From positions 1-15,379 of the forward strand of contig JADGIF010000195.1 of the NCBI GenBank assembly GCA_018985225.1: a stretch of 15,379 bases of DNA. The letters run 5' to 3'. A program made the position numbers and the translations under genes. Below the pieces are notes generated by a model, which worked only from the letters and a program-made list of their open reading frames with translations, was not told the origin of the DNA and did not search any database. This DNA comes from Amoeboradix gromovi X-113 (lineage: Eukaryota; Fungi; Sanchytriomycota). Each line of letters starts with the position of its first letter. The stretch's first letter is position 1. Shown here piece after piece: positions 1,659-12,534 of this stretch.

Positions 1659-2843
1659 TTATAATTTATTTTCCATTTCTTTGATTTTCTCCATAAACGA
1701 ATCGTCCAAATCTAATTCCAGATCCTCTTTAACATCTTTCCTCTCTTTCGAAAACAGTGTGCTAGGGTTAGCATACAACTGTTTAGTATACTCCTCCTCG
1801 TTTATTTCCAGCAGCTCCACTGGCGTCGATTCGTTCCTTATTTTAAACATCTTGTTAACATCATTCATTGCTTGCCGTGTGTGAAATGTCATAGTTGGCT
1901 CTGACTCAAACTTTTGAGGTATTGGCGTATCAAAACTGGTTTTTCGAGCCACTGGCTTCACTTCCGGCGGAGTTTCTTTAGCAGCAGGAGTTTTCGAAAT
2001 TCTTCTCGTTGTTACATTTTTATGCATTCCTTGTATAAACAGGTCATACTTTACCTGCTCAAAGGTTCTCATGGTTGCTCGATGCGCACTACTGGTGTAA
2101 TCAAACGAAACCGGATGTAGAGAATTAAAGTCATATTTGCGCACAAGGTTCGGATCATTCATTTCTTTTAATAGAATAGAATAGTGATCATTTTGCTGAG
2201 GAATTACGTACTGTTCTGCTATTCTTTTGGGTTGAGGTATTATTTGACCCTTTAATGGGACACCTTTTTGGATATTCTCAAGATTTACTTCAAAGATGTT
2301 GGTGTTTATGTTATTAGAATGATCAGAACTGATCTTGATTCGTTTTGAAGGATTTAAAGTGTTCATTTGAGGAGTAGTTGAGATTGAGTTTAGCATGGAC
2401 TGTAGTTCGGTTGAGTCTGTTTCCTTAACGCCCGTCGTTAATATTTGTTTAGATTCCTCATACAACTGATTCTTTTGAAGTTCCAATGCGTATTGCTTGT
2501 AAAACTCGGATAATTTATTAAATAACTGACAATTTTGTAGTTCCTTATATAAATCTAATTTCTTAGTGTATGACTCAATAATTATTAAATACAAATTAAA
2601 ATATCTCGAATCGTTTCTCATCGAAGTATTTTCCTTGTTCAATTTGATGAGATTGCGAATAACTTGAATTATCGGTTTTTGATCTGGATTTACTTTATAT
2701 GCCTGCATAATGGACTGGTACGCGGACTCAAAATTATCAAGTTTTATTGCATCTAAATCCACAATGTCGGAATTGTTCAGTCTACCAAACTTGCGAGGTT
2801 GAAGGTTTTCCAGTTGATTGTGTGACATAGTGTGAAAAAACAT
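1659..2843 (-). CDS. Bub1/Mad3 (MadBub)-family spindle checkpoint protein lacking a kinase domain, 394 aa
   Basis: N-terminal LENLQPRKFGR resembles Mad3/BubR1 KENIQPLRxGR. TPR-domain signature RNDSRYFNLYL...FYKQYALELQKNQLYEESKQILTTG. GLEBS-like TFEQVK. Bub1 CD1-like EPTMTFHTRQAMNDVNKMF (1845-1901). AATAAA at 1665-1670 (minus) next to the stop. Confidence 0.75.
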   Translation of the reverse strand: MFFHTMSHNQLENLQPRKFGRLNNSDIVDLDAIKLDNFESAYQSIMQAYKVNPDQKPIIQVIRNLIKLNKENTSMRNDSRYFNLYLIIIESYTKKLDLYKELQNCQLFNKLSEFYKQYALELQKNQLYEESKQILTTGVKETDSTELQSMLNSISTTPQMNTLNPSKRIKISSDHSNNINTNIFEVNLENIQKGVPLKGQIIPQPKRIAEQYVIPQQNDHYSILLKEMNDPNLVRKYDFNSLHPVSFDYTSSAHRATMRTFEQVKYDLFIQGMHKNVTTRRISKTPAAKETPPEVKPVARKTSFDTPIPQKFESEPTMTFHTRQAMNDVNKMFKIRNESTPVELLEINEEEYTKQLYANPSTLFSKERKDVKEDLELDLDDSFMEKIKEMENKL

Positions 2844-3463: not shown

Positions 3464-5069
3464 TTAATCAGAATCGACTACTGCTTCTCCATTGTACTCA
3501 TATAATTCAAATAACTTTGCCAAATCATCTAGTCTACTCGAAGACGCATCCTCTGTCAATGACCTTCTAGCAATAGATGTCTTTCCGTGTATATTATATG
3601 TTAGTACGCCTACTAAGTTAAAAATAAATACCAATTTTGTCATCTTTATGATAAAACAACACTCCTTTGTCAAACAGCTTGTTTTCATTTATATTCCAGA
3701 AAGATTTTGTAGACATCTTACTATTTACTATTCCCACAGCTTCAAACGACACATTTGGCCCAACGTCACTCCAAAACATGGACTGATATAAATAAGGTTT
3801 ATGGTACCCGGCCATGTTCATTCCAGCATGGTATCCAGATTGAACAGCGTGATCATAATGCTCTACTCGTCTTCTGCCAAGCAATGGATCGTAAAAGCTG
3901 ATGCAGTCACCAGCAGCATAAATGTTTGATCTGGCTGATAGCTCTGAGTTAACTAAAATACCACCATTTGAATCGATCTCAAAGCCAGACAGTTTAGCAA
4001 CTTCTACATTAGGTTTAGCGCCAATACAAACCACGCAATGATCTGCCTTCAAAATCTGATTATTGTCAAGGGTGATTAGAACTTTGTCCTTGTCATCACG
4101 CATTTCTTTAACCAGTGAATTGGCGTGTATGCGTATATTAAGCAGCTCAACTTGCTCTTTGCAATGATCAGATAGGTACTTCGGAAGAACCAAACCCAAA
4201 TTGCCGCTTTCGGGATAGACTTGCTGAACTCTAGCGCCATTTTGCGCTAAACCTACAGCTAGCTCGCTTCCCAAGAAACCACCACCAATAACTGCTATTT
4301 CCTTTTTCTTTTTAGCTAACTCTCTCAATTTAATAAAATCGTTTAAATGTCTGAAAGTTGATATATTGGCACTCTGGCTAGGTAGTTCTATAGGCTTAGA
4401 TCCGGTTGCAATTAAAAGCCGCTCGAAGTGGACACTTTCTCCGTTATCGAGTGTTATTATTTGGTTTTCAGCATCAATGGCAACTACTTTTCTATTTAGT
4501 TTCATTTCTACATTTTGTTTCTCATAAAACTCCAAAGGTTTATAGTAAACCGAGGCGGTTTTATTACTCCAATCCTTGAACTCGAGTTTGTCGTTGCCAG
4601 ATATCCAGAGTTCTTTGCTCATTGGTGGTTTTTGATAAGGTAGTTCTGCCTCCTCACTGATTATAATTATTTGACCTTCTTGATCGTTTTTACGAATTCC
4701 TTTTATAGCAGAAAATGATGCTACACCACTACCAACTAGAACATATTTCACCTTTAAAGGTTTGTCTTCAATCGGATCAGCAAACACTTGCTGCTCTGCA
4801 TCAGTGTCACTAATGGGTGCTTCTTCTCTTTCCACCACTTCTCCTGGTTTTTCGACTTCTTCAATAATTCTGTCTAATTTTGCTTTGCTTTTAATCAAAT
4901 CCTTGGCTCGTGGCAACGGTTCCTTCGGTGATGTAAAATAAACAAAAGAAGGCACCGCTATCAATGCAACACCAGCCAGATACCATATATTTTTATCCCT
5001 GCTTTTGGGCAAACTTGATTGATACCTTTGAAATACTCTCCTGGTAAACTGCGCTCTGCTGAAAAACAT
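3464..5069 (-). CDS. AIFM1: Apoptosis-inducing factor (AIFM1-type mitochondrial FAD/NADH oxidoreductase); join(5069..3632,3612..3464), 528 aa
   Basis: Presequence-like N-terminus plus TM segment; LVGSGVAS, ELPYQKPPMSKELW, IGGGFLGSELA, RRRVEHYDHAVQSG, YQSMFWSDVGP. Splicing the 19-nt intron yields DDKIVGVLTYNIHGKTSIARR, matching the AIF C-terminal VGIVLWN...IARK motif. Spliced length 1587 nt = 529 codons. Confidence 0.93.
3613..3631 (-). other. 19-nt spliceosomal intron in AIF
   Basis: GTATTTATTTTTAACTTAG on the minus strand. GT-AG ends, TTAAC branch-like motif, joins ORF 3618..5069 to ORF 3464..3688 in frame. An alternative acceptor 3 nt downstream (TAGTAG) would give 22 nt. Confidence 0.85.
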
Positions 5070-6810: not shown

Positions 6811-7029
6811 ATGATGACTGGAACAAAAACAGTTAAAAAATAAAAATATTAAACTCGAAAGTAGAGGTGAATTTCAAAACTGAAGTCAAAGAAAAATCGT
6901 TCAGTGTTATGTACAAAGAGCATTAAAAGACAGCTCTTACAAATATTGAAGAAAAAAGTTATGTAGAAATTTTGGAAATAAAAAACCGCCCAAATTAATG
7001 GGATCACTCTCAGGTACATAAATGTCATC

Positions 7030-7043
7030 CATTCGCTGGGTAC

Positions 7044-7075
<32 letters not shown>

Positions 7076-7230
7076 ACAAAGTCCGAGGACATGAAGTTGG
7101 GGAGAGTCGAAATTTATAGCTATATAGACCAATCAAAAGACTCTCCGTCGTTTTGAAAATCATGAATACAAATTATTTTTTCTTCGAAAAAAATTTAACA
7201 ATAGCTGTTTCACGGCGCAATAGTAAAAGA
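7030..7230 (+). repeat. Highly diverged 3' fragment of the same repeat family
   Basis: tgaaaatcatgaataca...aaaatttaacaatagctgtt resembles 9133-9197 tgaaaaaatcatgcaaataca...aaaattcaatagctgtt. Encodes IVPILTKSED, compared with IIPFTICENED. Confidence 0.4.
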
Positions 7231-10868: not shown

Positions 10869-12501
10869 ATGTCCCTCAAAAAATTGCTAATCGAGATAGA
10901 CAAATGCTTAAAAAAAGTAGCAGAAGGTCTAACCCACTTTGATCAAATATATGATAAAATATCACAATGCAATAACCAATCTCAGCGTGACAAACTAGAA
11001 CAGGATTTGAAAAAGGAAATCAAGAAGCTACAAAGAAATAGAGATCAGATTAAGTTGTACTTACAAAAAGATGAAATAAAAGATAAAAGACAATTAGAAG
11101 AGAACAAAAGATTAATAGAAACTCAAATGGAGCGATTTAAAGCTATGGAGCGAGAACTAAAATTAAAAGCGTTTAGCAAAGAAGGTCTTGCTCAGCAAAT
11201 CGTGGACCCCAAAGAAAAAGAGAAAAACGAAGCCATGGACTGGATATCCGAACAGCTATCTCAATTTGAAGGTAACATTGAGAAATTCGAATACGAATGC
11301 GAACAACTCGAGAGCAATAAAAAGTTAAAAAACAAGAACAAAGATAAATTGATTGAGCTTGAAGCATACATTGAAAGACACAAATATCATCAAATGCAAT
11401 TAGAGATATTACTTAGAATGCTTGAAAATGGCAAAATTCAACCTCATGAGATTGAGGATGTTAAAGATAGTGTTGCATATTATTTAGAGAACTACGAGGA
11501 TGAGGATGGCATGGATGAAGGAATTTATGATGACTTTGATTTGAACCAACAGGAGGAAGTCTTTAATATGATTCCTGAGTTCGTGAAAAAAGATGAGCCG
11601 GTAGTCTTACCTCCCCCCAAAAGATCGGCCAGTGTTAAGAAAGACGATATTCCAATTGAGCCTCCACCTCGTTCTGAATCCCCGAAAAAAGATTTGAAAT
11701 CCATAAACACTGCCACGCCACCCGCTGTGGAATCTCCCGGTCTATCTCCATTGAAATCTGCAGCATCTAGCTCACCACAACTTAAGGGATTTGCAGATAT
11801 GCTCAAAGATAAAGAGAGACCGCTTCCTGGACAAACTCAAACCGCCACTGCTGCAAATGCCAATAATACACATATCCTTAATTTCAGAGCCGCTATAAAG
11901 ACCACTGCTCCAGTGACACCTGCTAAGAAAAAGGAAGCTGGCGGTATGCCTCACACTTCGCAACATCCGGATATTTCAGTTCCTTCCGCTTTCGAGGATC
12001 TCTTGGCTAGTTTTAACCATGCCAAGAATTCAGCATTCAACAGAACCTTAGAAGAAACTAGCACACTATTTGAGGCTAGTCTAAAAGCTATTCCTACAAG
12101 CCATGACATTATACCGTAAATTCAACTAACGCAGAACACAACCTTACTTCCCAAAGAATGCTCATTCGGTACCCAGTTATTTTCCACAGATGCCCCTCGC
12201 TCTGTTCGACAATCCGGTGACATTCCAAAAATTAAATGCAGAAACGTTGTTTTTTGCCTTTTACTGTCAACAAAAGACATTGCAGCAATATTTAGCGGCA
12301 CGAGAATTAAAAAAACAATCATGGAGGTTCCATACAGGTGAGAAATTGTGGTTTCAAAGACATATGGAGCCAAAAGAGATCCATGATTTATATGAAATAG
12401 GCACCTATATGACATTTGATCCATACGACCAGTGGAAGCAGTTGAAAAGAGTAGACTTCATGTTTGAATATAAATATCTGGAGGATACTGAAATGCCATA
12501 A
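10869..12501 (+). CDS. NOT3: CCR4-NOT subunit NOT3/NOT5 (CNOT3); join(10869..12115,12135..12501), 537 aa
   Basis: N-terminal Not3 domain (EIDKCLKKVAEG...LKKEIKKLQRNRDQIK...MERFKAMERELKLKAFSKEGL) and C-terminal NOT box (ETLFFAFYCQQKTLQQYLAARELKKQSWRFH). Splicing the 19-nt intron restores the linker PYFPKNAHSVPSYFPQMP. Spliced length 1614 nt = 538 codons. Confidence 0.95.
12116..12134 (+). other. 19-nt spliceosomal intron in NOT3/5
   Basis: GTAAATTCAACTAACGCAG. GT-AG ends, canonical fungal CTAAC branch site, joins ORF 10869..12119 to the frame of ORF 12190..12501. Confidence 0.9.
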
Positions 12502-12534
12502 CAAATAAATTTACTTGTTTTAGTTGAGTTGCAA

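What the first reader, a model, noticed from the sequence alone, without database searches (positions are those of the whole stretch)
12116..12134. Fixed-length 19-nt spliceosomal introns: NOT3/5 intron and the shared architecture
Seen: GTAAATTCAACTAACGCAG (19 nt) must be removed to join the Not3 N-terminal domain to the NOT box. The only other intron found in the window (AIF) is also exactly 19 nt and aligns without gaps: GTA at 1-3, T at 6, YTAAC at 11-15, YAG at 17-19. The branch A would be position 14, sixth from the 3' end, giving a 14-nt lariat loop and no polypyrimidine tract. Known: introns this small occur in chlorarachniophyte nucleomorphs (about 18-21 nt) and heterotrich ciliates (15-16 nt); typical fungal introns are much longer. 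Inference: this fungus-like organism may have a ruler-like, remodelled spliceosome, since U1 and U2 sites cannot easily be occupied together on 19 nt. Standard gene finders and aligners with a 20-nt minimum would miss these introns.
Basis: partly seen in the sequence, partly recalled or inferred. Interest (0 to 1): 0.9.

Follow-up and report, generated by a model that had tools for sequence, protein, structure and literature searches.

The report
Tiny 3'-end introns in sanchytrid fungi
This alga-parasitising fungus has shrunk its several hundred surviving introns to 19-22 bases, shorter than any fungal intron I found reported, and keeps them about one per gene near the gene's end, the reverse of other intron-poor genomes, alongside a rare one-base change in its U2 splicing RNA.

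Summary
The 19-nt intron at 12116-12134 is real on DNA evidence; no RNA run was listed. The genome is Amoeboradix gromovi (Sanchytriomycota). Five homologues need exactly 19 nt removed. Independent sanchytrid assemblies carry the intron (19 or 22 nt). It occupies the same codon and phase as 68-74-nt introns of Rhizophagus and Synchytrium, so it is a shrunken ancestral intron. Length is not fixed: strict-motif counts are 4-8 per length at 15-18 nt, then 119, 45, 26, 7 at 19-22 nt: a hard floor with a tail. Of 35 introns read, none shares a gene, 31 lie in the 3' half (median position 0.85), and AATAAA follows the spliced stop (25/35) but never the unspliced one. Intron-poor eukaryotes normally show a 5' bias. 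All five snRNAs, U1 proteins, U2AF65, EJC and Upf2 are present; Slu7 and Prp18 were not detected. U2 has an extra U before the branch-pairing motif in two sanchytrids. I found no paper describing this. The scan found the same system, including the 3' bias, on other DNA of this genome (s1-532160).

The parts
10869..12115 (+). NOT3/NOT5 exon 1 (415 codons plus 2 nt), Not3 N-terminal domain
   Evidence: Pfam PF04065 E=4.5e-78; tblastn frame 3
12116..12134 (+). 19-nt phase-2 GT-AG intron; branch motif CTAAC at 12126-12130, predicted branch A at 12129
   Evidence: 19 nt surplus against 5 homologues; 22 nt in L006/L007 and 19 nt in L008/L009; same codon and phase in Synchytrium, 74 nt and Rhizophagus, 68 nt
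12135..12501 (+). NOT3/NOT5 exon 2 (121 codons), NOT box
   Evidence: Pfam PF04153 profile positions 19-126, starting upstream of the first ATG
12504..12509 (+). AATAAA just after the spliced stop codon
   Evidence: sequence; offset +5
3632..5069 (-). AIF exon 1 (479 codons plus 1 nt)
   Evidence: Pfam Pyr_redox_2 and AIF_C positions 1-48
3613..3631 (-). 19-nt phase-1 intron of AIF, followed by a second AG three bases on
   Evidence: 20-nt orthologue in L006 whose flanks favour the first AG
3464..3612 (-). AIF exon 2 (48 codons), with AATAAA overlapping its stop
   Evidence: conserved in L006; AATAAA offset +2; no Pfam hit on its own
6994..7101 (-). U6 snRNA gene, the only strong U6 match in the assembly; ACAGAGA box and AGC triad canonical
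   Evidence: Rfam RF00026 65.1 bits

Best explanation
These are major-spliceosome (U2-type) introns, mostly ancestral, eroded by deletion to the shortest length this lineage's spliceosome can still remove: 19 nt, with a tail to about 22 (a few may reach 25-28). Shown on DNA: GTA start, YTAAY motif with its A always at -6, YAG end, floor at 19, ancestral position in both genes tested. Inferred mechanism: U1 or U6 holds only +1 to +3 and +6, because +5 is T rather than G and neither snRNA compensates. U2 GUAGUA pairs with -10/-9 to -5, leaving about 3 unpaired bases in a 19-mer, which sets the floor. U1 and U2 then probably bind in turn rather than together. The first AG 5 nt past the branch is used, a distance that needs neither Slu7 nor Prp18. 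The extra U between U2/U6 helix Ia and the branch-pairing motif may give the slack for a 14-nt lariat loop. Most other ancestral introns were lost, 5' and middle ones in particular, leaving about one 3'-proximal intron in roughly a fifth of genes. My preferred reason for that placement, at about 40%, is coupling of the last intron to the poly(A) signal that sits at the stop codon (terminal-exon definition), which would help recognise an intron too short to be defined across itself. The confidence figure is for 'real spliceosomal introns with a floor and tail'.
For: Frame arithmetic. Independent assemblies. Length spectrum with floor. Junctions fall inside invariant motifs of eIF4AIII, Rpt6, an AGC kinase, ABCE1 and serine palmitoyltransferase. 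Sec10 Pfam domain split in two by a 19-nt intron in a relative. AATAAA near the spliced stop in 25/35, near the unspliced stop in 0/35, in 5.5% of random windows. All five 21-nt introns hold an in-frame stop. Ancestral positions. U1, U2, U4, U5, U6, U1-70K, a U1C-type zinc finger, Luc7, U2AF65, Cwc25 found. Slu7 is unnecessary at 9 nt or fewer (PMC10158995) and is also missing, with Prp18, in Stentor (PMC9505925). Floor-plus-deletion model: PMC10245619. Last-intron coupling to 3'-end formation: PMC3325483.
Against: No RNA: no run was listed, so splicing, branch point and efficiency are unobserved. The 35-intron set was picked with a motif score, so its consensus is partly circular. Only about 2% of the genome (about 230 kb) could be read. 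Absence of Slu7, Prp18, SF1-HH and the DBR1 C-terminal domain had no positive control and the assembly is a single-cell draft. The U2 insertion also occurs in unrelated organisms, so it is not proof of a role. In NOT3 the retained intron is not the last ancestral one.
Confidence: 0.9

Rival explanations
1. Strict ruler: the spliceosome measures a fixed 19 nt from the 5' GT.
For: 19 nt makes up about 65% of excess strict matches and 26 of 35 read introns; the AIF flanks favour the AG at 19 over the one at 22.
Against: 20-22-nt introns are common, interrupt conserved motifs, and replace 19-nt ones at orthologous sites.
Confidence: 0.05
2. For the placement only: one intron near the 3' end is kept because its exon-junction complex marks almost the whole coding sequence for nonsense-mediated decay, or licenses export.
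For: Mago, eIF4AIII and Upf2 are present. The normal stop is always in the last exon. No two-intron gene among about 36 (Poisson P 0.01-0.07). A relative lacks the ancestral eIF4AIII intron but has another 19-nt one 25 codons upstream, still one per gene.
Against: Roughly four in five genes have no intron. EJC-dependent NMD has not been shown in this lineage. The swap is a single case.
Confidence: 0.25
3. For the placement only: neutral mutational bias. cDNA-mediated gene conversion spares sites near the 3' end because the 3' UTR is too short to supply a homology arm.
For: Loss rates are lower at 3' ends in filamentous fungi (PMC532390). The poly(A) signal abuts the stop codon here. The retained NOT3 intron is not the last ancestral one.
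Against: The same study and others report a 5' bias in intron-poor genomes. Widely conserved 5' introns of NOT3 and eIF4AIII are gone. Only 4 of 35 last exons are under 40 codons, fewer than a simple distance-from-end decay suggests.
Confidence: 0.3
4. Not spliced: assembly or amplification errors, pseudogenes, or ribosomal frameshifting across these sites.
For: No RNA evidence; the assembly comes from amplified single-cell DNA (PMC8371127).
Against: Same sites in up to five sanchytrid assemblies; essential single-copy genes; in-frame stops; lengths of 19, 20, 21 and 22 would need different frameshifts; positions match annotated introns of other fungi.
Confidence: 0.03

Closest known systems
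Chlorarachniophyte nucleomorph introns (18-21 nt; PMC10245619)
   Same: GT-AG, AT-rich, nearly the same narrow size range, reduced genome.
   Different: Those are many per gene (over 800 in about 300 genes) in an endosymbiont relic nucleus; here about one in a fifth of genes, 3'-proximal, in a fungal nucleus, with a clear YTAAY branch motif.
Heterotrich ciliate (Stentor) introns, 15-16 nt (PMC9505925)
   Same: GTA start, branch A followed by a 5-nt tail, all five snRNAs kept, Slu7 and Prp18 not found, most intron-bearing genes with one intron.
   Different: Shorter, weak branch consensus, and biased to the 5' end of genes; here 19-22 nt and biased to the 3' end.
Mikrocytid introns, 16-17 nt (PMC10245619)
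   Same: Parasite with a reduced genome, a few hundred introns, narrow size range, conserved sequence.
   Different: There only 17-19 spliceosomal proteins and U2, U4, U6 were identified; here U1 snRNP, U5, U2AF65 and EJC are retained.
Microsporidian introns, about 25 nt (Encephalitozoon; PMC6349667)
   Same: Closest fungal-lineage case of intron shrinkage.
   Different: Only tens of introns, longer, the original set extremely 5'-biased in ribosomal-protein genes, poorly spliced; independent origin.
Myxobolid and dicyemid short introns, median 22-27 nt (PMC13644364)
   Same: Convergent shortening in parasites at conserved ancestral positions.
   Different: Animals; short introns enriched in multi-intron genes; broader size range.

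Membership tests
U2-type spliceosomal intron | GT...AG ends whose removal restores the conserved frame | tested here: met
U2-type spliceosomal intron | Branch motif complementary to U2 GUAGUA with a bulged A | tested here: met
   -9 and -5 pair in 35/35 (with G-U), -8 in 35/35, -7 in 30/35; partly circular because these positions were scored; genome-wide excess over control
U2-type spliceosomal intron | 5' splice site complementary to U1 and the U6 ACAGAGA box | tested here: inconclusive
   +1 to +3 pair in 35/35 and +6 in 30/35, but +5 G is present in 1/35 and neither U1 nor U6 compensates
U2-type spliceosomal intron | Major spliceosome encoded (U1, U2, U4, U5, U6 and core proteins) | tested here: met
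   U1 scores below the Rfam cut-off (37.8 vs 69.5 bits) but has the exact 5' end and an Sm site; Prp8 and SF3b were not searched
U2-type spliceosomal intron | Removed from mRNA through a lariat | not testable with these tools
   no RNA run was listed
Fixed-length tiny introns (Stentor or Mikrocytos type, over 90% one length) | One length dominates almost completely and orthologues keep it | tested here: not met
   about 65/23/12% at 19/20/21 nt; orthologues 19 vs 20 or 22
Intron-poor eukaryote pattern (yeast, microsporidia, Stentor) | Surviving introns biased to the 5' end | tested here: not met
   25 of 28 introns not preselected by pattern lie beyond 0.66 of the coding length, KS P=2e-9; no excess of 5' candidates or late-ATG frames
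Introner (transposon-derived) introns | Many near-identical introns at new positions | tested here: not met
   middle bases vary; both positions tested are ancestral; one relative's intron is of unknown origin
U12-type intron | RTATCCTT 5' site, TCCTTAAC branch, U11/U12 snRNAs | tested here: not met
   5' consensus is GTANTT; U11/U12 were not searched

The most novel reading that the evidence does not exclude
Sanchytrids run a spliceosome that can, or is selected to, handle only one tiny intron per gene, recognised from the 3' end through coupling to the poly(A) signal, with a one-base-longer U2 linker and no Slu7/Prp18 setting a 19-nt floor. Intron position would then be dictated by the splicing mechanism itself, reversing the 5' bias of intron-poor eukaryotes.
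Probability: 0.3. Interest if true: 0.9.

Novelty: new variant of a known kind. Interest (0 to 1): 0.76.

Why it matters
It adds an independent origin of ultra-short introns, in a fungus whose relatives have 56-195-nt introns at mapped sites, so the shrinkage can be traced intron by intron. The sharp 19-nt floor with U1 retained, a conserved U2 linker insertion and apparent Slu7/Prp18 loss give concrete handles on the open question of what sets minimal intron size; the U2 change can be tested in yeast. The 3' bias runs against the pattern reported for intron-poor eukaryotes and so tests the reverse-transcription loss model against terminal-exon coupling and NMD models. In practice, the published sanchytrid proteomes (TransDecoder on contigs, PMC8371127) are C-terminally truncated for an estimated 650-850 genes in this species, which affects domain inventories and phylogenomics of this phylum.

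Tried and rejected
A motif-free gene-model HMM was underpowered (12 calls, missed the NOT3 intron) but still gave a 19-nt mode. False candidates rejected: 18 nt at window 3944-3961 (coding), 45 nt at C401:4897 (zinc ribbon of a BRF1-like gene, judged from memory of the motif), a weak second intron in CSE1 (two separate genes), and a 29-nt match that belongs to a multicopy element. The idea that +4 T reflects loss of the U6 methylase failed: a METTL16-family gene is present. The idea that U1 was lost failed. Sanchytrium DNA was not on record; its intron sites are inferred from truncated proteins only. The metagenome scan for the U2 variant returned no sanchytrid; synteny found one. Paper searches for sanchytrid introns found nothing relevant; most subscription papers are not covered.

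Full report
Identity. The window is contig C431 of a 10.55-Mb, 1319-contig assembly. Three fetched contigs are 95,616, 49,639 and 41,655 bases long, the lengths of NODE_1, NODE_5 and NODE_16 in the Amoeboradix gromovi table of Galindo et al. 2021 (PMC8371127). The nearest named homologue of the NOT3 ORF is Sanchytrium tribonematis at 90%. That paper predicted proteins with TransDecoder on genomic contigs and does not discuss introns.

The observation. The 19 letters lie at 12116-12134. The upstream ORF ends at a TAA inside them and holds only the Not3 domain; the NOT box is in another frame and starts before its first ATG. Intact homologues aligned to the unjoined DNA switch frame here, and five of them leave exactly 19 surplus bases. 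Independent metagenome and MAG contigs have the same break, with a 22-nt intron in L006/L007 and a 19-nt one in L008/L009, while both exons stay conserved. The Sanchytrium protein ends in the same read-through pattern as L008. An assembly error is therefore excluded. The AIF intron at 3613-3631 is 19 nt here and 20 nt in L006.

Ancestry. Mapping database proteins on their own genes put an intron at the same codon and phase of NOT3 in Synchytrium (74 nt) and Rhizophagus (68 nt). Those genes have 11 and 15 introns, including shared ones at codons 8 and 86 and one further downstream, all absent here. The eIF4AIII intron of A. gromovi matches 62-74-nt introns of Paraphysoderma, Allomyces and Rhizophlyctis, whose shared 5' intron is again missing here. 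One relative lacks this intron and has a different 19-nt one 25 codons upstream. A TBC-domain gene is truncated at the same site in five sanchytrid protein sets.

Length spectrum. With the strict pattern the genome gives 8, 8, 5, 4 matches at 15-18 nt, 119 at 19, and 45, 26, 7 at 20-22 (tallied from the listed rows). Taking about 6 per length as background, the split is about 65, 23 and 12% at 19, 20 and 21. A relaxed pattern gives 490 at 19 nt (control 141) and 439 at 20-22 (control 240). Allowing for the 14% of read introns with YTCAY or YTTAY, I estimate 650-850 introns; this is an extrapolation. The shape is a floor with a tail, as the deletion-bias model predicts (PMC10245619), not a single length. 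A few longer candidates (25-28 nt) remain open.

Placement. In about 230 kb I searched all GT-AG pairs of 13-120 nt with a motif score, treating short first and short last exons alike. Thirty-five introns of 19-22 nt emerged, many splitting invariant motifs. None shares a gene. Median relative position is 0.85, 31 of 35 lie in the 3' half, and among the 28 not preselected by pattern 25 lie beyond 0.66 (KS P=2e-9). Unassigned motif hits at 19-22 nt match the background of neighbouring lengths, and frames with a late first ATG are no more frequent than chance, so hidden 5' introns are unlikely. AATAAA lies within -6 to +40 of the spliced stop in 25 of 35 genes and of the unspliced stop in none. 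This supports the gene models without RNA and shows the poly(A) signal sits close to the stop. The relatives' introns show the same trend. Published intron-poor genomes are 5'-biased (PMC532390, PMC8476143, PMC9505925, PMC6349667). I noted the bias before reading earlier findings, where s1-532160 reports it from other DNA.

Machinery. U1, U2, U4, U5 and U6 were found, U6 inside this window, with U1-70K, a U1C-type zinc finger, Luc7, U2AF65, two BBP/KHDC4-type KH domains, Cwc25, Mago, Upf2 and a METTL16-family gene. Slu7, Prp18, the SF1 helix-hairpin and the DBR1 C-terminal domain were not detected, without positive control. The U1 5' end, U6 ACAGAGA and U2 GUAGUA are canonical, yet intron +5 is G in only 1 of 35. 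U2 has one extra U between helix Ia and GUAGUA, and UU in the helix I bulge. The same two changes are in the syntenic U2 of a relative at 79% protein identity, so they are real. The exact 22-mer occurs in only 5 records of the JGI metagenome set, from other organisms; I have no count for the canonical form.

Mechanism. Shown: boundaries, floor, constant branch-to-AG distance, ancestry, placement, inventory. From established knowledge: Slu7 is dispensable when the branch lies 9 nt or less from the AG (PMC10158995), and Stentor, with the same 5-nt tail, also lacks Slu7 and Prp18. Inferred: six bases for U1/U6, about three free, five or six for U2 and a five-base tail add up to the floor, and U1 and U2 act in turn. 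Speculative: the U2 insertion supplies slack for the 14-nt loop. For the 3' placement I rank terminal-exon coupling to the poly(A) site (about 40%; PMC3325483) above a loss bias (30%) and NMD or export marking (25%); the present data do not separate them.

Limits. No RNA run was listed. The paper library holds nothing on sanchytrid introns but omits most subscription journals.

Verdict. Real, ancestral, ultra-short U2-type introns in a fungus: a new variant of a known kind, with an unusual 3'-proximal, one-per-gene layout and a candidate U2 adaptation. Interest 0.76.

Noticed in passing
window 6994-7101 (-): The genome's only strong U6 snRNA match lies in this window; it was not found at the matching place in relative L006.
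   Followed up: yes
L031:1501-1695 (+) and L049:11316-11507 (-): U2 snRNA with one extra U before the branch-pairing motif and a UU bulge in helix I, conserved and syntenic in two sanchytrids; the same 22-mer also occurs in a GC-rich marine eukaryote (L036, L037, L039) and ascomycete-like contigs (L035, L038).
   Followed up: partly
G000 C435:70217-70306 (+) and about 84730-84820 (-); also C5, C52, C373, C418, C442, C471: A dispersed element of about 90 nt, nearly identical between copies and often near contig ends, folding at -24.8 kcal/mol; no Rfam or tRNA match. Could be a divergent Pol III RNA gene or a small mobile element.
   Followed up: partly
L048:5086-5104 region (+): A relative's eIF4AIII has lost the ancestral intron and carries a different 19-nt intron starting GTC, 25 codons upstream; either a gain or retention of another ancestral site.
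   Followed up: partly
G000 C185:15761-15779 (-): A 19-nt motif match sits at the start of a partial BBP/KHDC4 KH-domain hit, so a branch-point-binding factor may itself be split by a tiny intron. DNA could not be fetched.
   Followed up: no
window 1659-2843 (-): Mad3/Bub1-type gene with the TPR domain only; no kinase exon and no intron motif seen downstream.
   Followed up: no
window 3944-3961 (-): Perfect 18-nt intron-like motif inside AIF coding sequence; a natural test of the 19-nt floor, since it should stay unspliced.
   Followed up: partly
stop codons in C435, C875, C401, C412 and the window: AATAAA most often overlaps the stop codon itself (offset -2 in 13 of 27 hits), implying very short 3' UTRs.
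   Followed up: partly
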